From: Bispira polyomma
Taxonomy: Eukaryota
Length of the DNA stretch: 64,000 bases
Reading direction: 5' to 3'
NCBI GenBank assembly: GCA_965649765.1
Contig: OZ287755.1
Location: 60,450,001 to 60,514,000 of the forward strand
Made by a program: the position numbers and the translations under genes. Below the pieces are notes generated by a model that saw nothing but the letters and a program-made list of their open reading frames with translations, searched no databases and was not told the DNA's origin. Positions within the stretch are counted from its first letter, which is position 1, and the number at the start of each line of letters is the position of its first letter. Below are positions 1 through 56,889 of the stretch, in pieces.

Positions 1-145
1 AGAATACCACCTTTAAGTACGACTGGAAAGTGTTCTGGCCATTTCTGTATTTTTCTACCCTACTTTGTAAGTAAAGAGAGATCATTTGGATGAACAATAA
101 CATATGTGACTTTTTAAACCCGACCAGACATGCATACTTTAAATG
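1..145 (+). repeat. Dispersed ~145-bp direct repeat, copy 1 (copy 2 at ~2142-2285)
   Basis: agaataccacctttaagtacgactggaaagtgttctggccattt...catgcatactttaaatgt aligns by eye with agaatgccaccctttaaaacgactgaaaagtgttctggccattt...catgcacacttaaaatgt at 2142. Confidence 0.8.
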
Positions 146-324
146 TGGACTATGTATAATCAATACAAATTCTTCACTTTTTTTTCACACAGTATGTATT
201 GTCACATATATACTTCTTTCACACAAACATTTCTCACAGACATTGAGATTTAATGTATATGGCCTTGGGATAGGGGGAACAAGACTCGTATCGATTGGCT
301 GTACTTGTGAAGTCAATATTATGT

Positions 325-2075
325 TTAGTTTAAATTTGATGTCGTTTTTAACACATCTTGGGCCCTCTTCACAAAGATTCTTTATCCATTCTTTGCTTTA
401 TTTTAAAGAATTTTCTTTATTTTGCTTAGCATTTTCTTACTCTTTAGAACACAAAGATTCTTTCCCAAGAATTATTCTTTATTTAAAGAAAATTTTGAAA
501 AAAATGCCTAATAAATACAGACTGGTCCAGAGTAGTCTTTATGTTTTAAGAATTTTCTAGAAATGCTTCGAAATATCAACTAGAATACTGTTTTATTCAT
601 TTTTGGTACTGATTTCACTTGACTATCATAAAACTTAATCTTGATAACTTGTAAAAGCTTATTTTTGCAACATAAATTCTCAAATCACAGGGTATTGTTT
701 TGTAATAATGAGTCAAAAATATTTATGTAGTTCCAGTGTGCTATTTTGAAGTACATAGCAAAAACAAAGCACTAACCTTTTAACTTTCAGTGGTGAAAAA
801 CATATCCAATTGAAAGTTTTATGTGCTAAATTAGCCAAACAACAATACATGTGTTTCTGAAGAAAATAGTATAGAATACATCTTCATATAATTGCAAAAA
901 TTCGACAGGTAAATTTGTATCATGTGTTTGGCCATTTTACAACACAAGATACGAATTTCACATAATTTTTTTTTCCTTTATTCAATTTTTTTCACTTTTA
1001 AACAAAAATATCCTAAGTATGTGTATATTCAAGTGTACCTTTATTATCCTGTAGTATTTTGGTAGTTTGTAGTTGAAAAAATAAACAAGTCATAGAATAT
1101 ATTTTTATAACTAAAACATTTATATTATATCGTATTATGTCCTCACACTACTGTATCTTAATAAATAAGCAGTTTTAATTACAAAGATGACATAATGGCA
1201 CATGTTTGACCTAGGTAGTAAAGCACTTGAATTTTGCTATGACTCACAACATATGCATTATTTAGAATTGCCATAATAATGCAATTTATCACACTTCTAT
1301 TACACAATTTAAAAAAGATTTTAAATTCCCATGTAATCATTGTCTTTTTTTATAAATATAGTTAGTTTGTAATTCTACTGTTGAAATAGCAAATATTATA
1401 ATGGAGAGAATTTTTGTTAGTTTAGTGCACTGAGCTGTACATGGCACATGTTTGACCTAATTAATAATTTGGATACAGTGCACATACACTTACTCAATAC
1501 AATGTGAATGGTGTGGTTATGTAATATGTAAACCAAAACTGTAAATAACTAAATAACATTAAAAATGAAAATTAAGTATGTAGTTATTGATTGGTAACAA
1601 AAAGACTCACTTTACAACACTTTAGCATGTACAAATTTCAAAAATTGTTTATATGTTTAAATAAAACAGTAAAAATATTATACGAGTAATACTGGGGAAC
1701 TCCCAGGAAGTGTGGTTGTTTTGAAAATAAAGAAAGAATAATTCTATGCTTAGAATGAACTTAGAATCTTTGTGAATAGGTTGTCACTTAGAATAAAGAA
1801 TTTTCTATGCTTAGAATAATTCTTAAAAAATAAAGAAATTCTTATTCTTAGTAAAGAATCTTCCTGAATAGGGCCCCTAAGGTCACATCACCATAGGCAG
1901 TTCATTTATGGAGGAAATCACGGGAGCGTAGTTGGTCTAGCATTTTCTGCTCTACAGACCAACATTATTCAGCAAGTCTGCTGCTAACCTGCCCACATAC
2001 ATATCAGGGCATAGATTTAAACTCAGGATGGCAGATGCATCCCAATCAAATGTTTATTTACTTCAACCTTGGTCC
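325..2075 (-). mobile_element. Old diverged tRNA-type SINE split by the 360-1876 MITE
   Basis: The minus strand of 1878-2075 reads gagtttaaatc...gtgggcaggttagcagc...gagcagaaaatgctagaccaact...gatttcctcca...gtgaccttag, the same layout as the younger SINE family. Its tail gatgtgttaaaaacgacatcaaa resumes at 325-359 beyond the MITE. Confidence 0.55.
360..1876. mobile_element. Non-autonomous PIF/Harbinger-like DNA transposon (~1.5 kb)
   Basis: Left end gggccctcttcacaaagattcttta is the imperfect inverse of right end taaagaatcttcctgaatagggccc. Flanks CTT/CTA are a near-perfect 3-bp TSD. Both arms carry aagaat/attctt-rich subterminal repeats. No transposase ORF. Same terminal motif as the elements at 35113, 35851 and 41502. 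Confidence 0.75.
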
Positions 2076-2329
2076 TTCATTTTCCACTGGTGATCTACAT
2101 AATGGTGATTAAGAAACTCTCAACATTTTAGGAATAAATTAAGAATGCCACCCTTTAAAACGACTGAAAAGTGTTCTGGCCATTTTTGTATTCCCTACCC
2201 TAATTTGTAAGTAAAGAGAGGTAACTTGTATGAACACTAGCATATGTGTTTATTTAAACCCGACTAGGCATGCACACTTAAAATGTTAACAAAATAATAA
2301 AATAAAATAAATGTGATGGTCAAATTGAG

Positions 2330-3440
2330 AAAAATATCCAACTCACTCCAAATGTGGTAAACTTAGTTTTCTAAGTCTTGGCATTTTTGAAACTCGGATT
2401 TCCTCTAGACTTACCACGGGAGAATTTGTTCTTGGTCAAAGTTGAGGTAATGGAAATTCAGCAAAAAAAAATCACAACAGATGTGCAACAGTATCTTAGT
2501 GAAGAAACAAAATGGGAGCTATTATGGCACCTTTTAAAGAAACTCAGATAGGAGATGTGCATGTACAAACCTCTTTTAAACTCAAGTACTTAACTGTAGA
2601 TGACATGGTTGAACGTGTTAAGTTTCTTGAGGTTGGATCTGGGCAACATTAATTTGTCAGGCTTAGAATGGGGAGGACGAAACGTATACAGATATGTCAC
2701 TGGCGTTTGGCGTACACCTGGGGGCCCTCGCGTGTGTACGAGTTACAGATTCGTTAAGAAATATTTTAAGTACACAATAAATGACTATCTATACTTATGT
2801 GGATGACCTGTATTGAGTTGCCGTCCAAAAGTATGACATCATACTGCTATTTTTGGCGGGAATTGGGTTTACTCATCTCAACACCAAATTGAGTTGCCGT
2901 CCAAAAGTATGACGTCATACTGCTATTTTTGGCAGGAATTGGGTTTACCAATCTATATCTCCAGAAAAACTGAAAAATATCTTAAACACTGGCAAGGATT
3001 TTCATGCAAAATCCCAAGGCTAAGAAAAGGGACCCTCAAAGTCTATTGGGGACTCAATTTCATACATAGATGTGTGTGTCCTTCTTAAGACCTTGCACAA
3101 TGCACATAACGACAATGCTATTTGACTTACAGCGTATCTTAGATCTAAAATGGCTTCTCATATACAATGGCACTTTCATATGTGTGCAGAGACCTTTGGC
3201 TCCAAAACACAGTGTGTTTATAGATAATTCTTTGTCAGGTATTTATTTATTTATTAGGGGATGCTGTGTATAGAGTCTCCCTCAATCCTAATCTAGGATG
3301 GGCAATATTATACCTAGAGTAATGCAACTTCATTGTCATGTTAAAATTGTGGGGACCACTACTGTCCCTAAATGGGGTTATTCTGCATTATAAGAAGCAG
3401 GCCGTAGTTCAGTTCATGAATCATAGTGGATGTAGAGGTC
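2330..3440 (+). pseudogene. Degenerate DIRS/Ngaro pol remnant (RT + RNase H)
   Basis: Fragmentary translations FLKLGFPLD (~2385), LAFGVHLGALACVRVTDSL (~2700), IYTYVDDL (RT YxDD, ~2788), VFIDNSLSGI (~3215) and QAVVQFMN (~3398). Many stops and frameshifts, plus a ~60-bp local duplication 2814-2872/2890-2948. Confidence 0.7.
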
Positions 3441-4512
3441 ATGCGGGGCACCACCTAGTGGTGGTATGATCAGTTCTAGGGAACCAGTCTCACCTCAGCC
3501 ACGGTTCATTGCATAGTACTATAAAAGCCTCAGCATTTCCAGTATTCTACCTTGTTGCTGCTAGACTGACAACATAAAACAAATATCAGAGGTCAACGAA
3601 AAGGGTGGCAAAGTTACAAATGAGTTGAAACTACAATTTTTCTTTTATATATTTTAGTATCTTGCTTTTAATCTGATTGTTGTTTATTATACTCTGTTTT
3701 ATTGCAACGGTCATAATGCCTAAAGTAAAGGTCTACTGCCTACCGTCGCAATATGGGCCTAATCTGACGGATTAATTAAAGTTACACAGCCCAGCTACAT
3801 TTAAAATTACATGTATTAATCACAAATTATGAACTAACTTACTGCCAAATTAGCGCTACACCCTGCAGTAATATTATCCTGTATTTAATGTTTTATTTAC
3901 AGATAACCTTATATTATCGCTCAAATGACATAATATCACCCAGGCTTATTATGGGTCTAGCATCGAATATTTAGCCATAGATAATATGTAGGGATGAATA
4001 TACAAACCCATGAAAACCGATACAAGGTAGTATGTACTTATTAAAACCAAATATGAGCAAAAGTATTTTACCTGCAACATACGGCCTGTTTACATTAGTC
4101 CAAAAATTACGTAACTGTAAAAATATTAATAAGCGATAACTGTGCAGAACATCAATATTTGGAAGTATCTTATCCAAAACATTTACCATGCATTTAAATA
4201 TGGTACACTATTACTACAACGACATAAGTAGACATGACAACCAGATATCACTTATTTGTTTACTGCAATAATGTAATGAGAAAGTCGTAATAAATAAATG
4301 CCAAAAAGTATATTTTTTATTTCTTGTGCCCTAACTGTAATGAAAATAACTTCCAAGGACAGAGATAGTTTTGACAATTGAACAGAGCAACCACAGAATT
4401 ATGATAAATGTATTTATTATATCACTGGCTGACAAACACCACTTATATGTGTTTGGTATGTATGCCTCAATGCCTCATCATAAAAGTCATTTAATGTCTC
4501 ATGTTTAGTAAT

Positions 4513-4968
4513 TTAAGAAGGGAAAATATAATTTTTGCACAATCTTGTCATCCTGATAAACAATTCAGACACTGCAGCTTTTCCAGTGGAATGAAACAGG
4601 TTACCACCAGTGTCGCATCCCTGACAGTAATTACTTATTGCAGGAAGAAACAAAAGCGCATCTCTTACCGACCCACCACTAGATAATTGTTTTCCCCTAC
4701 CAGATCCTTTTACATGGTTACAACATTTTATTTTGTATTTAGGACGAGCGTCTGAGATGATGTATATCAAGCTAGTGGTATACAAATTTATCAATAATAA
4801 AAATACTATGCAGTGTGAAAATTACATCCCATATGGTCGTTTGTTTTGATTAAGATCATATTTCAGCGGAACTTTGAACCAAGAACCTGAAGACTTTGCC
4901 TTACCTTCTACTGCAATAACAGCTGCCACACAGAAGCAGAGGAGTAGGACACCAGCTATAGGTCTCAT
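4513..4968 (-). CDS. Putative two-exon cargo gene inside the pogo element: 100-aa signal-peptide protein (exons 4968-4905 and 4751-4513)
   Basis: Exon 1 encodes MRPIAGVLLLCFCVAAVIAVE and ends G|gtaagg. A 153-nt intron ends catctcag|. Exon 2 continues in phase as DARPKYKIKCCNHVKG...LCKNYIFPS*. Exon 1 is homologous to exon 1 of the oxidase gene at 43083-43188. Confidence 0.5.
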
Positions 4969-5025
4969 ACTGCTGTAAAGGTAATACTATCAGTCATTAT
5001 GGGCAACACCACTTAATTAAAAATG

Positions 5026-8000
5026 TCAAAGTGAAAATCGGCAGCAGGCATAGATTGCATCACATTCACTGTTGTAACCAACACACAACGAGTGGTACCA
5101 TTTATCACAAATGTCACACTGCACCCAATTCACTGTGCTGTTGCATCCAATTGGTTCAGGTAACCCACATTTCTGACAGCAATCACTGTCAAATGCATCC
5201 TGCAACATATCAACCATGCCAAACATGTAGCTGGAAATGTAATTGGTAGTGCAGCAATGAAAAAATGTTTACCAGAGAAGAACTACATGAATATTGTTTC
5301 AAGGTTTAATGTTAAACAATGTTTAATGCTTTAACAGTTTGGGTGTAGATTGTTACTTTACATATTGATTTACCTTGGCCTGAGAATGTTTGGGTGAATG
5401 TTGTGGCTGAGATGTGGCTTTGGTTCTTCTCTGACTGTGGGTTCTCCTCTTCTGCAAAAGTCAATGGAGGAATGACAGTGTTAACCAAACCTACACACTC
5501 CAATAGACATTTCGAAAGACACATTTCACCATGTAGGCATAATACTTTTGAAATAGTAACAGCTAAATTAATGATAATTTGTTTAATTTGTTTGGACCAT
5601 ATTATAGAACACATCTCTGTCATGACGTGTAGCCAGTTTATTGGTAGACAAAATGGAGAGACAGCCTTATTAAAAATACTGGCAACCGGTTGAAAAAACC
5701 TACTAGCGTCAATATTAATGTTTCTCATGACATTGCTTGTGCCACCTGAGCAAGGGCCAAAACTAACAAGGTAAAATGAGTTATATATTACTTTTCCAGT
5801 AGATTCAATCGGTAACAATTGGACCTCTGCACAATCTTCCAATATAGAAGCAGCTGGTCTGGTTGCTGTCTTCTTTGATTCACTTTTACTCTGTTAAGGA
5901 AATTACATACAAATATGGAATATCCCAATGCCCGACATATATGAAAATCTAGACACATCACTAATCATATCTAAACTGAATAGTTAAGACATCCACCTTC
6001 AAAAGAATCATGAGCTATGACTGTTATGCTGTTATATCATTACTGGTTATGCGTGCAAATGCTACTAAAACTAATTCTAGTGGACGACAAATGATCCTAA
6101 TCATCAGTGTATGCATGGTAAGTTGAAGTCTATATAAAAAGAATTACTTTCAGCCTACTGGATTGTCGTAATGGTACATCTGTAGAGCAGTCAGCAGCAT
6201 CAGTTGGTGTGTCGGCAGCATTTAAAGGGGCACCTAATGCTGCTGGGATATCTTTCTTGGACTGCAACATGTACAAATTTTTGATCGACAGAATTTAAAC
6301 TTTAGCAATACTACACAAAATGAATCATAATTATAGTTCCTCAAAGGTTACATTGAAATACAGATATGTTTATGGTGGTATTGCTGAACAGGAAAGATGA
6401 ACATCGTTGAGGTAATAAATTGTATGCAGTTCAGGTATTTAAATATAAAGCTTTGTCTGAGTTGTGGTGCATGGAGGAGACAATATAGCCTGCTTCTCCT
6501 TTAGCTGCTGGGCGATTTCACTTGTGGTTATCACTCGACCATTTAAGATGACCCTATTTTTGTAGGGACATCAAAATTATCATTTGAGTGTCTATTTAGT
6601 ACAGGAAATGCCAACTGCACTTCTGGGGGTAAACTTCGAATTGCAGCAACAGGGTGAGGGTAATGGCCACATTTCACACACGGCACATCATCTGTGGGTG
6701 CAGCTGCACTATGCACATCAATCTCACTCACATGAGGCAAAGATACAACTCCTTCACATACTGGGGTTGCTATTTTGACTACCCTATATGAAGTATTCGT
6801 CTGTTGTAGATCTAAGTATTACTTGCCAGCAGTATACTACACGAGAAAATATGTTGTACCAGTGACTATTTCAGCCATGTTAAAATGGATATTCATGAGG
6901 ATGCATTATAAATTAATTTAGTGGATGGGAATTATCAATGTTTAATGCAATATTGCGGGACCTAGGAAAAAATTTATATGAAGTAAATCAGTGAAATTCT
7001 TTTTCTTAATTTGGTATCATCAATGGCTGTCGGGTCGAACGGATATATTCCTGAGCGCTTGAATGCACTCTGGATGACAGTCTTTGTAGCAGCTTTACAT
7101 GCTAAATTCCAGGCAGTTGGAAAGTACTGCTTCGTTACCCTAGCCCGGGCAGACCTGGCACCAGTGGCTATACACAGACTGTTGTATTTTTTCTTGATAT
7201 GATTGAATACTCCAACATCAAGGGGTTGTAAGATGTGAGTAGTATGGGCGGGCAGTCCCAAAAAGATAATCTGTTATTGAATTGAACATGTCATTATTTA
7301 CTTCATGCAGAATTTGATAGGTGCAGTCATTTAAAGAATTTTGTTAATAACATTTAAGCTTTCAAATTTTTAAGGTGTTGTGTAACATTCAACATATTAT
7401 AATTTGCAATGTTGGTACTAACAGAGACCATTAAGTTGTAGCAAGTATTTCAATAATTGGAGATGACAAGAGCCCTGTGAGAGGCTGGTGATATTGAATC
7501 AAACCTCCTTGTAATAAAAATCCCTGTTTGTGTTTCAATGGCACATGCATTTGAATTTGGATATTTAACGTCCACTCTGGTACCTTCTAGTAGGTTATAT
7601 TGGGACGGGTAGTTGGAAACGCTGGAGGAAACACTGCATACAGTCGGTCAAGGTTCTGCACTGAAACCAGCGGCCCACAGTAAGAAACTATCACCTTTCC
7701 CACATAGGCATCGACAGGATTCGAACTCACGCCGCCCAGAGGTGAGAGACCAGTGATTGTGAAGCACAATGCTTGCTAACCACTAGGCCACCGCGGCCCC
7801 AATGGCATATGCAGTGCTAATTCACAACACCATCTTTACTGTGAGTTTGGCTTTGTAAATACAATAACAAATACATTATAATCCGGTTTCACTTAGTGGG
7901 TGCAGGTTACAAACTTATGGTTATCATAGAAATCAGTTGAATACGTAAATGTTCTGTAAGTGTGCTATAACATGAGGTGCATGTGCTCATTTAATGTGAC

Positions 8001-10070
8001 ATATGCTTGAGACCATATTTTTAGTGCAGTGCTGATATCATGCTTTCAGAAGTTTTGTACTGACTCTTTCCTTGATGGCAGCTTCCAAAACCTCATAACT
8101 AAAGTGGGAGTCGTGATTGTCCATGAGTAATAATATAGGACGGTCCGAGCCACAGCTTTTAAGAAACAAATTAAAGAACCATTCCTTAAACAGTTCTCTG
8201 TCCATGTAGCCTGCAATTTACAAAGTAAAAATCAATACACAAAACTGGGACAGGGCAAGTGGTTTCACAACCTACATATTCCACTGATACGGATATTTAT
8301 TTAAAGTAGAACTGTAACTGAACTGGTAATCTTTTCATTCATGTGCAACAACTATTTTGCTTTTTACATATTGCTTGCTGTTGATTATGTGAGGAATTAG
8401 TTCTTCAGTTTACCATTTGGTGAGGTTCCGAAAAGCCAATTCTTGGGTAACTCATCCATTCCACTGAGCATTGGCATGGACTTCGAATAAATAAAAAAAC
8501 TGGGGAGGAGTTCACCATCAGCCCTGATACAATTCATGGAGGTGATGTGATCAATTGTCGCCACCTTTACGTAATATTCACAAATGAGCATCAATGAAGA
8601 CAAGTAATTTTGAAAAATAACTTTCTTTGGGGGGTGTCAAATTAAACTTAATCAATCTAAAGGTAAAAGAAAAGAAGGGCTATTCACAGGAAAAAATACC
8701 AGCACTTCTTTAGACAAAATGAAAAGAAAGCTCATTATAAAGTTCATTATAAGAAGAATTTGTTTGGCAAATGATAAATGTAGGAGTTTAGGCATTGCAT
8801 ATTCTGAATTCATCCATGTTGTTACACCTTTTCCTGGTAGGTTGCCTCCCCGGCAATCCCGTAGCACTTCTCCCTTGTCTGGACGTGGCTATTGATCCCA
8901 CTTTCATCACAGTTAAATAACCTTGTGGGATCATCTAGTATGGCATTATCTTTGAGAACTTTTTCTGTATGTTGTGTGGAAACAATGACGTTGGTTAATT
9001 TTGGGTCATGGCATAGCACTCACATAATTTAGTCAAACATTATCAACAAATAGCAGCAACACGTATTTCAAGGTTGTTAAAGCAATTTACTCATTTCATA
9101 GCATTTACTGACAGTGCATTTTTAACTTTTAGTTCATAAATAAGTGGTGGCTAAAAAAAGAGTTACCAAGTAGGTTGAAAAATTTCATTATCGTGTATTC
9201 ATCACTCTGTGATGCACGTCTGGCGTCCAATGTCTGAGGCACAGTCCATTTGAGGTTGTGTCTTTTTTAAATTCACGGAACCATTTATCACTTGGACCGA
9301 TGTCAAACTGGAAATTACTGTGGGTGATGGTGTTTCGCCTTCTCTTTACCAAGTCCTAAATGAAATAATTAGTTTGGGTTAAATGCACTGACATTTTCCT
9401 CCTGTAAAAGTCTGTTAATAGTTCATAATTGTGTATAAGTAGTACTTATTCATTGGTGTCTTTTATAGGAACTGTCAGTTAATAGTATACTGATTATATT
9501 TCATAATGAACAGTTAAACCGTTACATATATTGCGGATGTCTGTTGGGCATTGCTAACACACTTACCTCTCACCTTTATGGTCCCTGTTTGTATGTTGGC
9601 CAGAGATTTATGTAGGAAAGTTGGTACTTACTTGTTAGTGGTGGCTGGTTTACAGTGTAACATTGTGACTAACTACTGTACACTGCTTACCTCCCCTAAA
9701 ATAATTGCCCGTTGTGATATAGCATATGTAATTGTGTTGAAAGCGATGTTCAACTCAAAATAAAATCAACCAATGACATTTAATTAAAGTAGGTACACAC
9801 AAAACCACACATCGCAAGTCTTGTCTCTTTAAAGGAAAATTCTGTCCAGCATTGTAGACAATATATTCTACTAATGCTTGTTCTTCAGCCTCAGTTAGAA
9901 GAAAGTCTCGGCCAGGTTTATGAAAATCTTCCACCTTTCTACGTGCATGGCGCCTAAGTGTTTCTTTGGGGATTTTGAACATCTTTGCAGCTTTGTACAC
10001 AGATAATTCACCCTTCTTTATCATCCCAACTGCTGTAATAAGTGTGTCTCTGTCATATTGGCAGCGCTTA
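5026..10070 (-). pseudogene. Multi-exon pogo transposase (HTH_psq + CENP-B HTH + DDE_1) with probable C-terminal PHD finger; frameshifted
   Basis: Exons ~10070-9797 (YDRDTLITAV...SVYKAAKMFKIPKETLRR), 9355-9167 (GPSDKWFREFKK; 1-nt short in an A run), 8964-8828 (FNCDESG), 8564-8414, 8210-8065 (LLLMDNHDSH), 7270-~7000 (LPAHTTHILQPLDVGVF). There are 35 residues between D2 and D3. Further exons lie at ~6810-6490, ~6262-6149 and ~5891 onward, and a PHD-like CQKC...WVQCDICDKWYHSLCVG...YAC at 5026-5200. GT-AG phases were checked for exons 2-6. The start codon and the splice into the PHD are not resolved. Confidence 0.85.
7550..7800 (-). mobile_element. tRNA-derived SINE in a transposase intron
   Basis: A box TGGCCTAGTGG and B box GTTCGAATCC on the minus strand. 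13-bp TSD aatggca(c/t)atgca at 7537-7549 and 7801-7813. Similar to the copies at 42139, 45344 and 60747. Confidence 0.92.
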
Positions 10071-13000
10071 ACGGTGTGTGAAAATGAATTAACATGGTTA
10101 CACACATACAGCATATTTGTATATATTTCATTGTGTATGTTAAAATTCATAACAGAACCATCAACAGGTTACATATTTATTTTTCTATGATTTGTAGTCT
10201 ATATTATTTGTTTGGTTTTTTGGGGGGAGGGGGGGATTGCAGACAGCTGTTATTTTATTCTCTCCTTCAGTAAATGTAGGACTAATAATCAATAATGCTT
10301 TGCAACTTCCTTCCTGTTTACGTCTGTCTGCATGTGTGGGTTAATCACAACATTTGTTTATCAAAATAAAAGTTTTTTTTACTGTAAACTTATACTACAA
10401 ACAGTGGATAAGGTGCAGCAGTAAGTGTTATTGTGCTTATATGTGGTTTTTACCTCTATTTTTTGCAGTATTGACATTTTTTTTTTTTCGTTTTTGTTCA
10501 TTCTGACAGATGTAAACAACAACAAACCGGATGTTTTTAATTGACTGTATAATATTAATTTTAGTGGTTGTGGCATACATAAAGCCTTGTAAAGGGTGTT
10601 CATAATACATTGCATATAAACTGCCTTTATTTCGTCTGTATGTGCATTCAGTATTTTCTATTTATATGGCAATAAATCCGACTAGACCCATATTGCGACT
10701 GGACCCGTAATGCGACGGTAGGCAGTATGGTTGTAGTAGGTGTCATACAAGGCATAATCGTCCGGTTGGTAGTCGATATCAGGTTGTTATATCTGAGGAT
10801 TTGGTTACAGAATAACTTTTATCTGATAGTGAAACACGCAGTTCAGGTGGTATGGATAGTCTAGCTGTGGTTTCGTGAGAAATATTGTCACAACTCCAAA
10901 AAATGGGGAAAATGATGGAACGGCTTGACAAGCGCGTGTCGGATACAGAAACCGTGCTGTCAGCTAATAAAAACAGGCCAATTCTGACATAAATTCTAAG
11001 GAAAATTCTGCTAGCTCGAGTGTGGGAAGCATTGAAAACAATGAGAATACTGTTGTACTGAGAACTCAGTTTCTGAAACAAAATTCCTCTATTCAAAGCC
11101 ATGTTGAGGCACGATTGTTAGAGCTGAAACATCTTAATGAGAACCCCGTTAAAGGTAAGCTCAAATCACAGAGAGGTGGGGGGTCTGACCTATGTAGATA
11201 AACTCGACCAACTTAGGCGGGCCCACGCTCAGAGACATGTTTCTGGCAGCAGCTTGAGCAATTCAGCCACACAGGGCACCGGTAAGAGCAGTACGTTAAC
11301 AAACGCTGGCACAGCCAACTGTAAGTTTTATCAGGATGGATCCTGCAAGTACCGGGCAGCTATAAAACTGGGGAACACGTTCTTTAAACATGTATGTGAG
11401 AATTGTAGTGGGGCTCATAAAAGTAGTAGCTGTAGCAAAAAGCCATTAAAAGACTAATGGGCCACTGCAGAAATTCAGTGGCTGATATCAAAGTAGTTAG
11501 TAGACAGTTCTATGGCACTGTATTTCAGGATTTCCATCTGCTCGACAGACCTAGTATTATTGACTTATGTAAATATAACAGTAGTGGTAACAACTATAGC
11601 TACAGCCAAAGCCACAAGTAGCATTCTCACTGTCCCCCACATGCCGACCTCGCATAGTACCACCCAGCATGAAGGCAATACTAGTTTTTTGGGGAAAAGG
11701 AGTGTACAGAGCAAGGCTGGGGTCACAGTTGGGAAGGGTGCCAACAAGTGTAAGTACACAGGAGCTAAAGTCACAGACAATTCTAAAGGGGTGGCTGTAA
11801 AGAATAGGTTTCAAACACTACAAGAAATAGACCAAATTAGAAATGACAAAGAACAACTGTGGGTTCTGTCGTAGGCAATCGCATAGCTAAAGCTAGTCAG
11901 GCCCAAACAATGGGAACCATAAAGAGGGTTAAGGCTCTCACACCCCAAGCAGATCTGGTTGGCCCCAATAGCAGTGGTAGTGCAAGTGAAAGTATGCTTT
12001 GGAACTTAAGCAAAAAGTAAATAAAAGGGATCTTTTGGACAAGGCTAAAACTTGTGATACATACTGTGCTTGGTGGGAGCAAATAAGGTGGGCTAGGGCT
12101 TCACCCCTTTGACAGATTTAGGCTGTCGGGTATGGGACAGTGGTTCCACCAATTATAGTTCTGACATCTTAAAAATGCACAAGTTACTGTGTGAAGATGG
12201 TAGGCAAAACTTTAGAGGTTTGCAAATTCCAGTAAGTTCACAGCTGAACCCTGAAAAATAGGCTCAATATTTAAAAAATACTGATACTGGCAACTCCCGC
12301 TATTAATCAAATATGGGTTTCCTCTTGATGTAAGACGTGAAAATATTGATCAATCGGATGGAACCAATCATAAGTCGGTCAACGATATTCCACAGCATGT
12401 GGCCACATATCTTGCTAAAGAATGTAAGTTTGGTGCAATATTGGGCTCGTTTTAATATCCTCCAATTATTAACATGCATTTCTCGCATATGATGTCTCGA
12501 GACACGTCTAGTTCTGCTAACAAAAGGGTCATCATAGATCTTATCTGACCTATTTGCCTGTCTGTAAATGCAGGGGCATCTGCCAGTGAATATCTCGGTA
12601 CTGAGTTTTTATTGTCCTATCCCACTGTGGATAATATAACCAGGGAAGTGGCAAAGCTTGGCAAATGTTGTCACATTTTCAACGTTGATATAAGTCACGC
12701 ATTTAGTCTTCAAGCAAATTTCGGGCACAGTCAGATACATAATAGCTCAAGAGGGCTCATATACACACTTATATCGACGATTATCTGCGTCTGGCACTCC
12801 CTAGTAAGATTGAGAAAATATATTACAGACTGTAGGATCTGTTTGCAGAATTGGGCCTGACTGTCAGTCCCAAGATACTTGTACCACATAGTACTGAGGT
12901 GGTCTGCCTAGGTATCTTGATAAATACTAAAACTTTTACAACCTCTATTTCACCAGAAAAGCTCGAACAAATTAAGACGTTGTGCGAACAATGGAAAAGA

Positions 13001-42740: not shown

Positions 42741-43058
42741 GCAGGCTCCTTCGAAAGTGAACGTTTAACTTTACCTGCAGGCTCCCTGGAAAGAGAATGT
42801 TTACCTTTAATTGGAGGCTCTTTGGAAAGTGAAGATTTACCTTTACTTACAGACTCTTTGGAAAGTGAACGTTTACCTTTAATTACAGACTCTCTGGAGA
42901 GTGAACGTTTACTTTTACTAGCAGGCTCTCTGGAAGTGAATATTTACCGTTAATTACAGGCTCTTTGGAAAGTGAACCTTACTTTTACTTACAATCTCTG
43001 AAGAGTGAACATTTACCTTTTACTTGCAGGCTCTCTCAAAAGTGAACGTTTACCTTTA
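42741..43058 (+). repeat. 36-bp minisatellite (about 9 copies) immediately upstream of the oxidase start codon
   Basis: Unit gcaggctctctggaaagtgaacgtttacctttactt. Preceded by a TATA-like cttatatata at ~42722. Confidence 0.9.
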
Positions 43059-43082
43059 GTAAGGACCTCATCTTGCCCCACA

Positions 43083-43188
43083 ATGGCTGAAGATATTACC
43101 TACAAGCAGGGCAGCAGTATGAGACGTCTAGTTGGTATACTTATTATCTTCTCCTGTCTGGCTATGGCAGCTGTCATTGTATTAGCAG
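43083..43188 (+). CDS. Oxidase exon 1 (N-tail plus hydrophobic segment)
   Basis: MAEDITYKQGSSMRRLVGILIIFSCLAMAAVIVLA, donor G|gtaagg, phase 1. A second in-frame ATG (MRRL) is an alternative start. Confidence 0.75.
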
Positions 43189-46100
43189 GTAAGGCTAAGT
43201 CTAAAGGTGTTTGCAAAAAACAGCACTAATGACACATGATCTAAATCTAGTATAGTATTATTTACCATAGTATTATTATTGTTAACTTTAAAAAAGTGCC
43301 AGTTTGATATATATCATCTCGTCTCAGGCACTTGTTGTCAAAGAAGGCATTTTCAAAAATATAAGTGACAAGGTCTAGCACGAGAGAAAAATGATATGAT
43401 GATGGGTAGACCAGAGATATGGGACCTGGGATTTGACAGCTAGTGTGGTGGGTGAACCAGAGATATGGAACCTGGGATCTGACAGCTAGTGTGGTGGGTA
43501 AACCAGATATGGAACCTGGGATCTGACAGCTAGTGTGGTGGGTAAACCAGAGATATGGAACCTGGGATCTTACAGCTAGTGTGGTATGTAGACCAGAGAT
43601 ATGAATCCTGGGATCTGACAGCTAGTGTGGTGGGTAAACCAGAGATATGGAACCTGGGATCTGACAGCTAGTGTGGTGGGTAAACAAGAGATATGGAACC
43701 TGGGATCTGACAGCTAGTGTGGTGGGTAAACCAGAGATATGGAACCTGGGATCTGACAGCTAGTGTGGTGGGTAAACCAGAGATATGGAACCTGGGATCT
43801 TACAGCTAGTGTGGTATGTAGATCAGAGATATGGATCCTGGAATCTGATAGCTGGTGTGGTAGGTAAACCAGAGATATGGAACCTTGGGATCTTACAGCT
43901 AGTGTGGTATGTAGACCACAGATATGGATCCTGGGATCTGACAGCTAGTGTGGTGGGTCGACAAGAGATATGGAACCTGAGATCGGAGAGCTAGTGTGGT
44001 ATGTAGACCAGAGATATGGGACCCAGGATCTGACAGCTGGTGTGGTGGGTAGACCAGAGATATGGGACCCAGGATCTGACAGCTAGCCGTAAGCTGTTTC
44101 ATTCTACTGGAGCAACAACTTGAAAACTGCAATGTTTGATTTGTTTGTTTAGATGAAAAGTGATTACTGAAAGTCTATTTCCCCTTATTAAACCCCTAAA
44201 TCTCTCCAGGAAAAACAAGGCGGATTACATTGCCTTTACGATGAACCACTGATGCATATGGATTAAATCTATTTGATGTGATCTGGAAACTCCTTGGTTT
44301 TTTACATTACACACAGACAATATGTGCAGAGCATAGCGCACCAGAACTGGAGTGCAAGGCAAGGACGCACCAAAAATGCAGAAGTTGAACATTTTAGCAT
44401 ATTTTTAGAAATTAGGCAACTAAAATCTATCTATAAAGTTGCCTCTATCCATTATTCATTGTCTTACTCATCCAGAACCACACACAAGTGTATTTAATCT
44501 TACTTTGTTTGAGACTTGCATTAATACTACACAAAGTTGCAAGTTAATAGTATGTTCTAGTGTAAAGTACTCTCATCTGTGAAATGTTTGTAATTTTGCA
44601 AAACAAATCATTTGACCAAAACATACATCACTATCTAGGTTTCATCACAATATTAACAGACTCATGGAAGAAAATCATTGAACCTACTAACTACATTAAC
44701 ATATTATACAGGCCTGAACAAATTGGAAATAAAACAAAAATATTGAAAAAAGGGATTTAAATTTACTTTGGGGCAGTAATGGATTAAGGCTTTCTATTAT
44801 CCGAAATACTTAATTTCTTAAGTCCATAAATTAAGTTGGGAGTGTTTCTATTTTTGAAATAAATGCTTTCCGAAGTTTTTGATAACAAGCTTTGGAAATG
44901 TTAAGTCACATGACCTGAAATTCGACAGCAATAACACATAGGTAGAATATTTGCAGTGGTAAAGTCAATTCTGCTCAAAGGGTATCAATGATATGGTAAA
45001 TACATATGTTTGTTATGTAAATAAGTATTTGTATCTTTCTTACAAGATCTATTTTGTTGCATTTTTTACTACATTTTGCAAATATGCCTTTGGACAATGC
45101 CTTTAATTAGATCGTGCACATATATACATACCACAAATATAATCCAGCATTGTTAGGCCTGCAAGTTTTAGTTCAACACTTTGAACAAAAATTACAACAA
45201 ATATACTGTGACCTAGTGGCTAACACACTCGAGTAGGAACACAGAGAATCTGGGTGTATTCCAGCCTGGGTGACCTGGTACCATCACATACAATGTGACT
45301 TGATGACCACCTAAAATAGCGTCTTCTGTCATTGGGTCATGTCGGGCCGCGGTGGCCTAGTAGTTAGCAAGCATTGCGCTTCACAGTCACTGGTCTCTCA
45401 CCTCTGGGCGGCGTGAGTTCGAACCCTGTCGATGCCTATGTCGGAAAGGTGGTAGTTCCTTACTGTGGGCCGCTGGTTTCAGTGCAGAACCTTGATCAAC
45501 TGTATGCAGTGTTTCCAACTACCTGTCCCAATATAACCTAAAACAGGTACTAGAGTGGACGTTAAATATCTAAATTCAAATCAAACATTGGGTCATGTCC
45601 CAAATTGCAGGCAAAAGATCCTTGTGAGTTGTAAAAAATGTAGGTACATGCCCAACCCTCACATTTCAGTTCGGGAAATTATAGTTTAATGATGCTGGTT
45701 GGCTGTTAAGAAAATATTAATGGGTACCATATATATCACATACAGGTAGATAAATGCAAAGTAAAAATTTGAATACAATTGAAACAGTTTAGCCAAAATA
45801 CATCATTTAAGGTGTCTGTTATTCCTATATATTGCAGTTGTCCTCACCAATAAGGTTAAAGATGATGACCATGAACAGTTCAAAGTAACCTCTTTAACAG
45901 GTATAGTAACTGTATATGCATGACAGAGTCTGTTTATACGCAAGTATTTTCTGCATAAACAATGCCTTAATTATATGTAGGTCTAATTTACGATGTACAA
46001 ACATGTTACAGACAAATTCATAGGTCTAGCTACTTGGCAGTATACGCCTGTTTCAGATGAATTCCGGTCTGGCTACTGGGTGGTACTTCCTGAAACGTTT

Positions 46101-49100
46101 TATATATGTGAAGCCGGTCACACCTTTCCATTGAGCCGGTATGATAATCCTACTTTTTGAAAATATTTGAAACATAACACAGAGTGAGAGTTCCTTCTAA
46201 TATCACAGTAGTAAGTCTGCATTCGTTCTACTTCCAGATACATTTTATAATGTGCAACGATTATATTTTAAACTGTTCGAAATAATCGTCGTAGAACTCT
46301 TCATTTCTGTGTTTGTCTGTATTAGTCACAAAGCGTTTTACTTAAGTAGCAGTAAGCTATTGTGGCGGTTCCACATTCAAGTTCGATCGGGAGAATGGGC
46401 CCGTTTTTGAGATCGGGGTAGTCGGGGTGCACAAATCGATATAGTTTGATTTTTGAAAATGTGAGGTGACCTTCCACATCGAACTGATTGTGCCACATTT
46501 TAACGGGACATCGATTCTGATCGACCTTATAGGTAGTAGGACTTTCAACACCAATTTTCCCTGACCTTCCCAACCCTTGTGGGCTCGAATTGATTGGCAA
46601 TAGGATCTGATGTATGGCAGCAGGATAGAACATATCGCATAACTATGTATGCCCACAAATGTGGGTCTAAATAAGACCAAGCTTTTATTCAAGAATTCCA
46701 AAAAGAATATCACTAAGTTGCAACATATGTGGCAAGAAGTGACAACCGTTTTCCAAAAGCTTTACAAGAGAATCTTAAAAAAATTAGACCAAAGCTTGTT
46801 CAAACAGATTGTAAATTAAAACACAAATTACTAGAGGTTACTGACAAGGGTTTAGTGGTTGTGTCGATACTGACTGGCAAACGTATCTATAGCATGTTCT
46901 GATAGCACCAATTAAAGAGGTAGGTTTCCTCAGCATGGTATTAATTTGCATAAAATTTTGAACTTTTCCTCTAACAGAAAACCCACCACCAGAGGTATGT
47001 GCTGATGTAACAGTAGACATGGCAGTAGTGGGTGCTGGAGTGTCTGGCGTGTACTCAGCCTATAAGCTATCCCAACACTATGACTGGAATATCAATATTT
47101 ACGAGGCACAAGACCGGATTGGTGGGAGGACCTTTAGTGTTGAGTTGCCAGGTATAACTGACTTCAAGGCAGACGTCGGTGCTATGAGGTTCAAGAAGAC
47201 AGATCATCAAAGACTTGCTAAATTAGGGGAAGAGTTGGGTCTGACTACACAGCCGTTTGGTACACCCTCTGCAGAAGAGTCTTTGTATTACTTTAGAGGA
47301 CATGTGCTTAATAAAGATGATATTGCCAGTGGTAATGCACCCTATCAGATGACTGACAAGGAGAGAGAACTCAGCCCAAAGTTATCTGATCTTTGGCAGT
47401 AAGTATATGATCACATATAAAATGTACTAATCAAAATCCCTTCTCTGACACCATTGTATCCCACCTGGATTCAAATATAATTGTGTGCATACCATTGTCT
47501 TTGTCATAGCAATAATCTTTATTTAAAAAAAATCATAATTGTTTTCATCTCTGGTTTAAATGGTATTCAGGTGATAAAGGTCTAAATGTAGATAGCAGTA
47601 AATATATTCATGTACATGCTGATGATTCACACATTTTAGTGATTAAAATTATTTTCTAAAAGTAATAAAAAACTAAATATTTTTAGCTTGGTTTACAGTG
47701 TATAAGCATATTCAATATTGCGATAAAACAATTTATTTTTACCAGTTACTGGAATAATCTGGTCATCGCTAATGAATCCAAGAACTTAGATGACCCTTAC
47801 GACAAAATCTGTACAGATGGAAAGAAGGCATATGAAAAGGGGTAGGAATAATCATAACTTGCTAAAAGTTTTATTCCTGCTGATAATCTTTTTTGATTTC
47901 TAGCACAGTTAACTTTTTTTTAAATACTTTGGATGTGTAAAAGTGCTGAAAATTATAAGAAACAACTAACATATTACTGCAACAGGCTATTTGACGGTTT
48001 AGTGGTCTTATTGTTAGAAATCAAAGGGCCAAATCAAAGAGATTAAAGTGTAATATTAAAGTGTTATATATGATATATTATCATCACTTTGTTTCTATAT
48101 AATTTAAGGTGTAACAAAAGATTGGGAAATCAATATAGTCCAATATGTTATAAACCAATATGAAATAGGAAAAGCAATAAGTATATTCATCTAATTTACT
48201 TCATTTGTAGTTTGTTTTCTTTCTCCTACAATCATTGCTTTTTCACTGTGCAAACTTCACATATTGACAGAAACTCAGATTATGTTTGCAAATGTATTAC
48301 TGGGATATGATCTAATATATTGCAAAACACAATACAACTGGAATATCACAAAATAGCGCAATACAAATTCTCAGCAGAATACTTATCGCTAAGATAAATA
48401 AATTAAGAAATACTAATACTACTTTACAAGATTATTCCCCTCATAATATCTTTCTTTGCTAATATTTCAGACACATGAATGCTTACAAAGAGGTAGCATC
48501 TATGGAAGCTCTGGAGTATCACAAATACATGATGGGTTTCCATAGTGTGGCTGGAAACAACTGGAACTTTGCAGAGTGGACTGAGCCAGGGTTTATTCCT
48601 AGTCGGCCATCTGGGGACAAGTTCACTTTTAAGGAGGGGTTCCAGGCATTATCATTGACCATGATGGACAGGATACTACAAAATACCAGGTGAGAATCTA
48701 GTGGATTAGATTCTACCGCTGAAACTTTTAACAGATTATTATTAATATTATTATTGTTAATTTGTGTAGCACCATATCGATATACATTCTCCCCTAATCC
48801 TAAATACAAGAAAAATATTGAAGCCAATAAAAGCATCTGGTGGTAGAGACGAGGGTCTAGTTATCTCTGCAGTTCAATATTGTAAAAAAGTGTACCAGCT
48901 GCTCAAGCTCTCATAACTTGTGTTGTCCAAATAAGTGATTTGACAATGAAGCAATGAAAGTTTTCTATTGCAATAAACATTTTTTTGCAATCAAATTCCA
49001 AATCTTATTTCATAAGATTCTTTTAGTTCAAGTAGAATTTATTGTTTGCAGATATTCCATCGTAATACAATGGTAATTTAAACGGTAAATTACAAAAAAG

Positions 49101-55100: not shown

Positions 55101-56889
55101 TGTCAGTTAATAAGCTGTTATTGAACTTATAAAACCCTTTACCTCTATGCCATTGTGGAGTTAAGTCAAAACTGATCCCTATCAAACTGTGATCTGATTT
55201 AATACTAGGAATAATTGATGATTGTATGTTTTCATATTGCATATCACTAGCGACAAAGAACATGTCCAATCTGGATTGTACTAAACCCCCTCTACTTTTA
55301 TTGCGCCAAGTGTATTGTCGTAATTTTGGATGTTGGTGACGATAAATGTCACACAGATCAAATTCTTCCAATAAATCTTGTAACTGATTAGAGTAAGCTG
55401 ACAATGTTTCGCCTGAGCCTCCATTTTTATCAAATTCGGGAGCTAAATATGTGTTAAAATCTCCTGCAAGTATAATCTTTTTTCCCATAAAGTATAGCAG
55501 TTTATTACGGAGAAAGGTAGTAAAATCAACTTGCTCTCGTACGTTATTCTTTGTTGGAGCATAAACATTGACAAAAATTAAATCACAGCTATCAATTGAT
55601 ACATTGAGTAAGAGAAATCTACCCGATTCATCTGTAAATTCTTCATGAATTTGTGCATTATAATGTTTAGGTATCAGAGTGGAAACACCTCGTGCATTAC
55701 TAGCACCATGTGAGAAATAAAGGTCAAAATTATAGAAATCTTTTTTCCATTTTGACTCCGACTCGACAGTACAGTGAGTTTCTTGGAGGAATACTACTCC
55801 TTTGTGATTAGCTTCCAACCATTTTAATATTGATATTCGTTTATTGCTATTAGCTACGCCATTTGTATTAAAACTAAAATTTTTAAAATTGCTTTCCTGA
55901 TTCATACGTTATAGAAGTATAACTATATGATACTTTTCTGTATAATAAGATAAGCAAGATCTTTGTAGCTGCAAATCAACAAATGGCTTATGCAATCAAT
56001 TATCTTTGTTGAATGGAACAGGGAACCAAGTCCTGAGATATTCATGATATTCACATACCTAATAATTATTAACTCTAACAGAGACCGTGAACTGAAGAGA
56101 AACTTATTTAGACACGATATACTTTTAACTTTTACAATAATAAGATTTTTGTCACCAACTTTCAAATGTAACCGTGTGAGCAAACAAAAATGGAACACAA
56201 AGAAGATATTTAAACTAAACTTAAACAAGCAAACTGATGACAAGATATACAAGATACAATCAAACATATATACATAAGTGACAACATTTATAGATACAGA
56301 GTGGTAGATCATAACTGGACATTTAAAAAAAAAAAAAAAAATTATTTATTTATTTTAGCAATGGTACTAGCCAGTAATAGTACATTAAGCACAAAACTGC
56401 AAACTGTTGAACATATTTTATAACAATTGAAAAGTTTTAAAACATTTTCACACCTGGCGTAACAGCGCATTACATTATTTCAGGCAAACTATAATGGAAA
56501 ATATTAGTAAATTTCAGTAATGGCACTAGCCAGTAATAATTAAGTACAAAAATTGCAAACTGTTTCACATATTTCATAATAATATTTCAAATATTTAAAC
56601 GTTTTCACAGCTGATGTAATAGTATCATACAACAATGAGTATCATAAACTACATATATTTGTAGAATTTCAATTTTGTCAGTATTAGCAATTACATATTC
56701 TAATATTCATTAGATGGAAAATAGGCAAACTGATGTAAAGATTTGTCACAACAATAGAATAGTTTAACTTATTTTTCACAGCGGATACAATAGTAAGCAT
56801 AATTACAACACACACTATGGTACTTACATTTTGACTTTCAAAGAATAGTACATTATATCATGTATACACATGATATCCCCACAAATACA

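What the first reader, a model, noticed from the sequence alone, without database searches (positions are those of the whole stretch)
4513..5007. pogo transposon carries a spliceable signal-peptide cargo homologous to exon 1 of the neighbouring oxidase gene
Seen: about 20 bp after the PHD stop, the minus strand reads ttgcccataatgactgatagtattacct...cagcagtatgagacctatagctggt...tggcagctgttattgcagtagaag|gtaaggcaaagtct...atgatcttaatc. This aligns with the oxidase ttgccccacaatggctgaagatattacct...cagcagtatgagacgtctagttggt...tggcagctgtcattgtattagcag|gtaaggctaagtct...atgatctaaatc (~43073-43247). The similarity extends ~60 bp into the intron, so the copy arose at the DNA level. Splicing 4968-4905 to 4751-4513 gives an open 100-aa protein: signal peptide MRPIAGVLLLCFCVAAVIAVE plus a basic mature part with 5 Cys. 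Inference, three alternatives: (a) Pack-type capture of the first exons of a secreted oxidase paralog (exon 2 could end at TCTG|gtaggg, and KIKCCNH weakly resembles KVKDDDH); (b) a functional secreted or antimicrobial-like passenger peptide; (c) the transposon donated a leader exon to the oxidase (exon shuffling).
Basis: partly seen in the sequence, partly recalled or inferred. Interest (0 to 1): 0.85.

Follow-up and report, generated by a model that had tools for sequence, protein, structure and literature searches.

The report
Oxidase gene fragment captured by pogo transposon
One copy of a pogo-type transposon holds a 560-base copy of the start (leader exon plus part of the first intron) of an amino-acid-oxidase gene 7.6 kb away; it looks like an inert by-product of DNA repair, a kind of capture already described in animals, not a new secreted-peptide gene.

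Summary
Window 4446-5004 (minus strand) lies inside a complete pogo-type element (3736-10725, 22-bp inverted ends, TA duplications). It starts 20 bp after the stop codon of the element's PHD-like last exon. Six other copies of this pogo family lack the piece and join the two flanks directly.

The piece is 96% identical to the 5' end of an oxidase paralog just left of the window (C8:60446787-60447356), not to the window's own oxidase (about 70%). It holds 36 nt of 5'UTR, the 64-nt signal-peptide exon and the first 459 nt of a 1.3-kb intron. An 11-bp duplicated pogo target flanks it, with 2- and 3-nt microhomologies at the junctions.

This fits a local, templated repair insertion, a single-copy "Pack-TIR". 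In all five paralogs exon 1 splices directly to the FAD-binding exon. The proposed frame has a stop in the source copy and indels in other paralogs, lies in an interspersed repeat, and has no protein relatives.

The idea that the transposon donated the leader is rejected. No RNA data exist for this organism here, so expression is untested. It is a new member of a known kind, of modest interest.

The parts
3736..10725 (-). Complete pogo-type (Tc1/mariner-pogo) DNA transposon, 6,990 bp including the captured piece. Its transposase coding region is split into several blocks: HTH_psq, DDE_1 and a PHD-like C-terminus.
   Evidence: Homology to five 92-94% copies and one 79-83% copy ends at 3731-3734 and 10727. 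Pfam gives HTH_psq at 9755-10150, DDE_1 at 8038-8205 and 6974-7261, and a weak PHD hit at 5026-5226.
3734..3757 (.). TA target duplication (3734-3735) and 22-bp terminal inverted repeat on the 3' side of the transposase.
   Evidence: the same 22 bases (2 mismatches) in inverted orientation at both ends, each preceded by TA.
10704..10727 (.). 22-bp terminal inverted repeat on the 5' side of the transposase, and TA target duplication (10726-10727).
5026..5226 (-). Last coding block of the transposase (PHD-like Cys/His finger), stop codon at 5026-5028.
   Evidence: ORF. (PF00628, E = 0.003, below Pfam's cut-off, so 'PHD-like' only).
5005..5015 (-). First copy of the 11-bp duplicated pogo target (TAAGTGGTGTT). 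Its last two T are also shared with the parent gene (microhomology).
   Evidence: three-way comparison of the window, empty pogo copies and the parent gene. One search reports a joint 4434/5005 with 11 letters fitting either side.
4446..5004 (-). Captured host piece, 559 bp with unambiguous origin, copied from the oxidase paralog at C8:60446787-60447356.
   Evidence: 96% identity, ungapped, no homology beyond either end. Absent from six other pogo copies.
4969..5004 (-). Copy of the oxidase 5' untranslated leader. The upstream ATG at 4995-4997 is out of frame here because of a 7-bp deletion shared with the parent gene.
   Evidence: alignment of six leaders.
4905..4968 (-). Copy of oxidase exon 1: ATG plus 21 codons plus 1 nt (phase 1), a hydrophobic signal-peptide-like leader, followed by a GTAAGG donor at 4899-4904.
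   Evidence: Mean Kyte-Doolittle value 2.7 for residues 4-21. No signal-peptide predictor was available.
4446..4904 (-). Copy of the first 459 nt of the parent gene's intron 1 (about 1,298 nt). It includes part of an old interspersed repeat (about 4549-4804).
   Evidence: About 35 dispersed 68-88% matches to 4549-4804 elsewhere in the genome.
4513..4794 (-). Judged a chance or secondarily opened frame in intron sequence.
   Evidence: The parent copy has TAG and TAA in this frame. Indels break the frame in paralogs. No Pfam family and no protein relatives in 5.8 billion proteins.
4435..4445 (-). Second copy of the 11-bp duplicated pogo target. Its first three bases (TAA) are shared with the parent gene (microhomology).
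4413..4418 (-). AATAAA, a candidate polyadenylation signal of the transposase gene. The captured piece therefore sits between stop codon and signal, in the 3'UTR and in sense orientation.
   Evidence: Read from the sequence and conserved in the empty copies. Function is inferred, not shown.
43083..43188 (+). Leader exon of the window's own oxidase gene: in-frame ATGs at 43083 and 43119, donor after 43188.
46978..47402 (+). Second coding exon of the window's oxidase (FAD-binding GxGxxG fold). The phase-1 acceptor AG is at 46976-46977. The exon's 3' end was not determined.
   Evidence: (PF01593 E = 9e-15, PF13450).

Best explanation
This is a single-copy 'Pack-TIR', a host gene fragment captured inside a transposon with terminal inverted repeats. 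A pogo-type transposon landed 7.6 kb upstream of a flavin amine/L-amino-acid-oxidase paralog, in the same orientation. Later the element suffered a break between the transposase stop codon and its polyadenylation signal. Repair or replication then switched template, at a 2-nt microhomology, to the nearby oxidase gene. It copied 559 bp (5'UTR, signal-peptide exon 1 and the first third of intron 1). It switched back at a 3-nt microhomology, landing a few bases upstream of where it left, which produced the 11-bp duplication of the pogo target. Shown here: the insertion, its parent, the direction of copying, the junction anatomy and the lack of further copies. Inferred: the repair mechanism. The piece has no promoter of its own and no matching acceptor exon. 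It is most likely an inert passenger in the transposase 3'UTR, and it has not been spread by transposition in this assembly.
For: (1) The piece lies inside an element with intact 22-bp inverted ends and TA duplications. (2) Six other family copies (C2, C3, C4 twice, C9, C11) join window 5005 to about 4445 with nothing between. (3) The parent is 96% identical over 570 ungapped bp, 7.65 kb away on the same strand, with no homology beyond either end. (4) The parent context is ancestral. The parent gene stays collinear with four other paralogs through the leader, intron blocks and FAD exon, and has open downstream exons. Of 14 differences that outgroups resolve, 10 are derived in the parent and 4 in the captured copy. 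(5) The junctions share TT and TAA between pogo and parent, and 11 bp of pogo target are duplicated. (6) Only two high-identity copies of the piece exist in the 1.04-Gb assembly, the parent and this one. (7) Short-read unitigs from public DNA runs reproduce the captured copy exactly (439 bp, no differences). A second unitig carries the 13 differences expected of the parent. (8) Proximity in cis, microhomology, an internal breakpoint and capture after insertion are the features that Tan et al. 2021 (PMC8277862) report for single-copy Pack-TIRs made by transposition-independent gap filling.
Against: The mechanism is inferred from the end product only. Microhomologies of 2 and 3 nt are short and could arise by chance. 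A 6-11-bp flanking duplication is not a stated hallmark of the gap-filling model, and it is equally compatible with a staggered break or with reverse-transcriptase-primed insertion. The unitigs break at both junctions, so no independent read was seen to bridge pogo and cargo. The best run may come from the individual that was assembled. Expression was not testable, so 'inert' is an inference from the missing promoter and the lack of frame conservation.
Confidence: 0.75

Rival explanations
1. The captured leader is part of a working new gene. Either exon 1 splices to the open frame at 4751-4513 to give a roughly 100-residue secreted cysteine-containing peptide, or it forms a chimeric transcript with the transposase.
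For: The copy keeps its ATG, a hydrophobic leader and a consensus GTAAGG donor. The downstream frame is open for 97 codons in phase 1, which is rare in Markov resamples (42 of 5000). The T at 4652 that removes the parent's TAG is specific to the captured copy. Tan et al. report that an appreciable share of Pack-TIRs are transcribed, mostly as chimeras.
Against: The homology to the parent starts only 36-38 nt before the ATG, so no oxidase promoter was copied. The frame has TAG and TAA in the parent and is broken by indels in two paralogs. It lies in an interspersed repeat. It has no Pfam family and no relatives among 5.8 billion proteins. Equal-sized real stretches of this window reach the same open length in 11% of cases. 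An ATG after the transposase stop would be a downstream cistron. No RNA data exist.
Confidence: 0.07
2. The piece arrived through RNA. A short unspliced oxidase pre-mRNA starting at the transcription start was reverse-transcribed into a nick in the pogo element by a LINE enzyme (target-primed reverse transcription), which would explain the flanking target duplication.
For: There is a 6-11-bp target duplication. The piece starts close to where the homology among paralog leaders begins, which could be the transcription start. The target is A/T-rich. LINE-like reverse-transcriptase ORFs are present in the window.
Against: There is no poly(A) or LINE 3' tail at the end of the piece. The piece ends inside intron 1 at no recognisable RNA 3' end. 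The parent is only 7.6 kb away on the same strand, a cis bias expected of DNA template switching and not of retroposition.
Confidence: 0.1
3. The direction is the reverse: the transposon carried the leader first and donated it to the oxidase genes (exon shuffling).
For: None beyond the shared sequence itself.
Against: All five clustered oxidase paralogs have the leader in a collinear context with conserved intron blocks. Six other pogo copies, including a 79%-diverged one, lack it. The captured copy differs from its parent by only 4%, whereas the paralog leaders differ by about 30%.
Confidence: 0.01
4. The insertion is an assembly artefact, with a chimeric read or mis-join placing oxidase sequence into the pogo copy.
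For: No read or unitig was seen to bridge either junction.
Against: The captured copy has its own 21-23 differences from the parent. Short-read unitigs reproduce it without a single difference, alongside a separate unitig matching the parent. The clean duplicated target and microhomologies are biological signatures.
Confidence: 0.03

Closest known systems
Single-copy Pack-TIRs of animals (Tan et al. 2021, Nat Commun 12:4280; PMC8277862)
   Same: Host sequence lies between the inverted ends of a cut-and-paste DNA transposon. The parent copy is close by on the same chromosome. There is microhomology at the breakpoints, the breakpoint is internal, and capture came after insertion, as shown by family copies without the piece. 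It is small (their median is 224 bp) and single-copy.
   Different: It carries an 11-bp duplication of the transposon target around the piece. The piece sits exactly between the transposase stop codon and the candidate poly(A) signal of an apparently full-length element. It holds a complete signal-peptide first exon with its splice donor. The paper text I searched had no occurrence of Tc1 or mollusc terms, so I cannot say whether pogo elements were among its cases.
Pack-MULEs and Pack-CACTA of plants (transduplication)
   Same: Gene fragments including exon-intron pieces are copied at the DNA level into a TIR transposon.
   Different: Those are typically non-autonomous, multi-copy and mobilised, and often combine several genes. 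Here there is one fragment, one copy, no sign of mobilisation, and a different superfamily (pogo, TA target).
Turmoil-1 transduplication in C. elegans (PMC2572040)
   Same: An animal DNA transposon holds sequence derived from host protein-coding genes.
   Different: There the coding pieces lie in the inverted terminal repeats and are old. Here the piece is internal, recent (4% divergence), and its parent lies next door.
Templated ('filler') insertions at repaired double-strand breaks; FoSTeS/MMBIR template switching
   Same: A short stretch is copied from a nearby template in direct orientation, with 2-3-nt microhomology at both switches and a small duplication at the return point.
   Different: Those terms describe a mechanism, not a genetic element, and the mechanism is inferred here, not observed.

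Membership tests
Pack-TIR (transduplication in a TIR transposon) | Non-transposon host sequence lies between the two terminal inverted repeats of one element | tested here: met
   TIRs with TA duplications at 3734-3757 and 10704-10727. The piece is at 4446-5004.
Pack-TIR (transduplication in a TIR transposon) | A parental copy of the captured sequence exists elsewhere in its native gene context | tested here: met
   C8:60446787-60447356, 96% over 570 bp. It is followed by the FAD exon (60445538-60445915) and a further open exon (60442546-60442761).
Pack-TIR (transduplication in a TIR transposon) | Other copies of the same transposon family lack the piece | tested here: met
   Six copies join the flanks directly.
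Pack-TIR (transduplication in a TIR transposon) | Multi-copy, i.e. the chimeric element has transposed | tested here: not met
   Only the parent and this copy are found at high identity in the assembly. It therefore belongs to the single-copy class.
Pack-TIR (transduplication in a TIR transposon) | Transcription of the captured piece | not testable with these tools
   No RNA run holds the stretch. The three runs found are genomic DNA.
pogo / Tc1-mariner-type DNA transposon | Terminal inverted repeats flanked by a TA target duplication | tested here: met
pogo / Tc1-mariner-type DNA transposon | Transposase with an N-terminal psq/CENP-B-type helix-turn-helix and a DDE_1 catalytic domain | tested here: met
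   PF05225 E = 9e-9. PF03184 E = 2.5e-6 and 3.5e-4 on two separate blocks, one just below cut-off. The catalytic DDD residues were not mapped, because the coding region is split and no full model was built.
Flavin amine oxidase / L-amino-acid oxidase (parent gene family) | FAD-binding Rossmann fold with GxGxxG, and similarity to amine or L-amino-acid oxidases | tested here: met
   PF01593 E = 9e-15 and PF13450 E = 3e-13. PDB amine oxidoreductases and L-amino-acid oxidases score E = 3.5e-14 to 1e-6. Substrate was not tested.
   Stops in the parent copy, indels in paralogs, no protein relatives.
   The leader has a hydrophobic core, a basic N-terminus and small residues at -3/-1, judged by eye and by a hydropathy mean. 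No SignalP-type tool was available.
   No RNA runs.

The most novel reading that the evidence does not exclude
The chimeric element may be a natural 'leader-exon trap'. It is an apparently complete pogo that carries, in sense orientation behind its transposase, an ATG, a signal-peptide exon in phase 1 and a strong splice donor. If it transposed into an intron of another gene, it could splice onto downstream phase-1 exons and send a new protein into the secretory pathway. Alternatively, the secondarily opened 97-codon frame could already give a new secreted peptide. The family has spread a passenger before: the 252-bp SINE at 7548-7799 is shared by most copies. The evidence here does not exclude either reading, but nothing supports activity.
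Probability: 0.05. Interest if true: 0.75.

Novelty: new member of a known kind. Interest (0 to 1): 0.3.

Why it matters
This is a clean, datable example of how a cut-and-paste transposon picks up a neighbouring gene's first exon. Parent, empty copies and both junctions are all available in one assembly. That makes it a useful illustration of the transposition-independent gap-filling route to Pack-TIRs in an invertebrate genome, and for the pogo group. The cargo is of a kind that could matter for exon shuffling: a start codon, a signal peptide and a splice donor. As it stands, it is a single unmoved copy without evidence of expression. It adds a case and does not change understanding.

Tried and rejected
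(1) Oxidase exons downstream of the piece. tblastx of window 1-5100 against 40001-64000 found only the leader, so this is not a full inverted paralog.

(2) A small oxidase exon 2 between the leader and the FAD exon. The conserved intron blocks turned out to be an old tRNA-like SINE relic, not coding. Leader and FAD exon have matching phase-1 splice sites in all paralogs.

It has no Pfam family and no intact copy in the genome. Among 5.8 billion proteins of 51-163 residues it has no relatives. That blank says nothing about longer or shorter proteins.

(4) RNA evidence. No RNA run is on record. The three runs laid are genomic unitigs. They cannot show expression and they break at both junctions. 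The 4434/5005 'skip 570' joint seen in all runs is expected from the other pogo copies, so it cannot be read as an empty allele.

(5) Other host captures in the family. The 678-bp extra piece in the C2 copy is an ordinary high-copy repeat, with 3,788 first-look candidates.

(6) Earlier notes of this scan: nothing on this place or these words.

(7) The joined (spliced) protein model was not sent to any search. The frames were searched exon by exon, by reference.

(8) The organism was not identified. The tools at hand hold no named eukaryote genomes, and I ran no further search on it. A molluscan affinity of the oxidase is only my recollection of similar secreted oxidases and is not claimed.

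Full report
**Checking the observation**

Within the window, the minus strand of 4885-5003 aligns with 43077-43208 at 70% over 132 columns (blastn E = 8e-13). Weaker collinear blocks follow further into the intron: 4754-4810 with 43266-43320, and 4504-4604 with 44089-44200. The window has no N and 35% G+C.

**The genes around it**

The exon at 47019-47402 (+) matches Pfam Amino_oxidase (E = 9e-15) and NAD_binding_8. It also matches solved amine oxidoreductases and L-amino-acid oxidases (E down to 3.5e-14). The 'oxidase' is therefore a flavin amine/L-amino-acid-oxidase-type gene.

The window is G000:C8:60450001-60514000, in a 1.04-Gb eukaryotic assembly. FAD exons of close paralogs (82-88% protein identity) lie at four other places:
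- C8:60445538 (-)
- C8:60535181 (+)
- C8:60565788 (+)
- C8:60610553 (+)

More distant ones lie at C8:56.63-56.72 Mb and C11:12.05-12.22 Mb. This is a tandem gene cluster.

On the minus strand from about 10150 down to 5026 lie blocks that match three families:
- HTH_psq (9755-10150)
- DDE_1 (8038-8205 and 6974-7261)
- PHD, weakly (5026-5226, E = 0.003, below cut-off)

**The piece is inside a transposon, in this copy only**

Five copies of this element at 92-94% identity (C2, C3, C4 twice, C10), and more diverged ones (C11 at about 80%, C9), match the window from 10727 down to 3731-3734.

The ends carry a 22-bp inverted repeat (2 mismatches) starting CTGCCTACCGTCGCA, each flanked by TA. This is the signature of the Tc1/mariner-pogo group. 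The element is 3736-10725.

In six of those copies (C2, C3, both C4, C9, C11) the sequence matching window 5005 is directly followed by the sequence matching about 4445, with 11 bases fitting both sides. The C10 copy is not informative at this point. The stretch between is therefore an insertion private to this copy. It starts 20 bp after the transposase stop codon (5026-5028). It ends just before an AATAAA (4413-4418) that is conserved in the empty copies. It sits in the sense orientation, in what is presumably the transposase 3'UTR.

**The parent**

A genome-wide search found one near-identical copy: C8:60446787-60447356 (-), 96% over 570 ungapped bases, 7.65 kb to the left of the piece and just outside the window. 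There is no homology between the two loci beyond either end.

That locus is the 5' end of the oxidase paralog whose FAD exon lies 1.3 kb downstream (60445538-60445915). A further open exon lies at 60442546-60442761. The parent region stays collinear with the four other paralogs through the leader, two intron blocks and the FAD exon.

Two other paralogs match at 68-71% over about 390 bp.

Of the 23 differences between piece and parent, two fall in the chance extension into the pogo target. Of the 14 that outgroup paralogs resolve, 10 are derived in the parent and 4 in the piece.

Together with the empty pogo copies, this fixes the direction: oxidase gene to transposon.

**What was captured**

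I aligned six leaders and the acceptor regions of five FAD exons. Exon 1 is ATG plus 21-23 codons plus one base (phase 1). The FAD exon begins, after a pyrimidine-rich tract and AG, in phase 1 with a conserved PPPE-x-C...VAVVGAG stretch. Exon 1 therefore joins the FAD exon directly, and intron 1 of the parent is about 1,298 nt.

The captured 559 bp are:
- 36 nt of 5'UTR (4969-5004)
- the 64-nt exon 1 (4905-4968)
- the first 459 nt of intron 1 (4446-4904)

The conserved intron blocks just beyond the captured part are a tRNA-like SINE relic, not an exon.

The frame 4751-4513 is open in the window, and from an AG at 4806 onward for 97 codons. The evidence against it as a coding exon is:
- The parent copy has TAG and TAA in this frame.
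- Two paralogs have an 18-bp insertion and single-base deletions there.
- The stretch 4549-4804 matches about 35 dispersed loci at 68-88%, so it is an interspersed repeat.
- Pfam finds nothing.
- A search of 5.8 billion proteins of 51-163 residues finds nothing.

An open frame this long occurs in 0.8% of first-order Markov resamples. It occurs in 11% of equal-sized real stretches of the window, many of which are transposon-coded. The T at 4652 that removes the TAG appears derived in the captured copy, judged from one outgroup.

I conclude that this is intron sequence with a chance or secondarily opened frame, not an oxidase exon. As required, I did not search the joined model, only its pieces by reference.

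**Junctions and mechanism**

Read on the minus strand, the structure is as follows:
- The pogo sequence runs up to TAAGTGGTGTT (5015-5005).
- The oxidase piece follows (5004-4446).
- TAAGTGGTGTT comes again (4445-4435), and the pogo continues.

The parent has TT just before the first captured base and TAA as the last three captured bases. So both junctions have microhomology, of 2 and 3 nt. Between 6 and 11 bp of pogo target are duplicated. The parent shows no inverted ends or target duplication of its own, so the piece is not itself a mobile element.

The same-strand parent 7.6 kb away, the microhomologies, the internal breakpoint and the capture after insertion are the features that Tan et al. 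2021 describe for single-copy Pack-TIRs made by transposition-independent gap filling (PMC8277862).

I therefore favour template switching during repair or replication of a break in the resident element. This is an inference from the product. An RNA-mediated route (a LINE enzyme copying an unspliced pre-mRNA fragment) would also give a target duplication. It lacks a poly(A) or LINE tail and does not explain the cis proximity.

**Independent support and limits**

No RNA run holds the stretch. Three public runs (two samples, one study) are genomic. One unitig equals 4443-4881 with no difference. Another carries 13 differences, exactly the number that separates the parent from the piece in that span. 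So both copies exist in the reads.

Unitigs stop at both junctions, so no single record bridges pogo and cargo, and the best run may be the assembled individual. The 'skips 570' joint seen in all runs is what the other pogo copies would give, and cannot be read as an empty allele.

**Function**

The piece brought no oxidase promoter, since homology starts 36-38 nt before the ATG. It has no partner acceptor exon and lies after the transposase stop. Most likely it is an inert passenger that lengthens the 3'UTR of this transposase copy.

If its donor were used, the resulting exon junction downstream of the stop codon could expose that mRNA to nonsense-mediated decay. That is speculation. The leader peptide looks like a signal peptide: basic start, 17 hydrophobic residues, small residues at -3/-1, mean hydropathy 2.7. 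No predictor was available.

**Verdict**

The case is a new, well-resolved member of a known kind, of modest interest.

Noticed in passing
window 7548-7799: A 252-bp SINE-like repeat is nested in the pogo element, flanked by about 12 bp fitting both sides. Most family copies share it, but the C10 and C11 copies lack it, so the family spread after acquiring this passenger. Unitig depth there is about 10^6. Related copies lie at window 45374-45541 (oxidase intron 1) and at C8:60443188-60443393.
   Followed up: partly
C8:60442546-60646487, and C8:56.63-56.72 Mb, C11:12.05-12.22 Mb: There is a tandem cluster of at least five or six flavin amine/L-amino-acid-oxidase paralogs, with more distant groups elsewhere. 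The leaders differ in start codon. The window's gene and the 60535181 paralog have an in-frame upstream ATG adding 12 residues. The 60535181 and 60610553 paralogs lack the second ATG, and the latter lacks both.
   Followed up: partly
C8:60447255-60447318 (parent exon 1) versus window 4905-4968: Five of the 23 differences between parent and captured copy fall in the 64-nt leader exon. At least three of them are derived in the parent and change residues, and one more puts a glutamate in the hydrophobic stretch. The working gene's signal peptide seems to have changed faster than its fossil copy.
   Followed up: partly
window 45159-45338 and the matching intron-1 blocks of all paralogs: An old tRNA-like SINE relic, with a box-B-like GGTTCGATTCC motif, is conserved at 70-79% in intron 1 of all five oxidase paralogs. 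It therefore predates the tandem duplications.
   Followed up: partly
window 42900-43060 and 43380-44000: Tandem repeats of about 38 bp lie directly upstream of the oxidase leader exon. A satellite of about 45-48 bp fills part of intron 1.
   Followed up: no
window 50260-56312 (-): A run of long ORFs (495, 390, 181, 303, 382 and 129 aa) lies just downstream of the oxidase exons. It looks like a large retroelement and was not examined.
   Followed up: no
L024:583-1261 (C2:32020394-32021124): The C2 copy of the pogo family carries a 678-bp nested insertion. It belongs to a very abundant, young repeat family (94-98% identical copies, 3,788 first-look candidates).
   Followed up: yes
window 3736-10725: This pogo family is unusually long (about 6.4 kb without the cargo). 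Its transposase coding blocks are separated by non-coding stretches shared by all copies, suggesting introns, and it ends in a PHD-like zinc finger. No full gene model was built.
   Followed up: no
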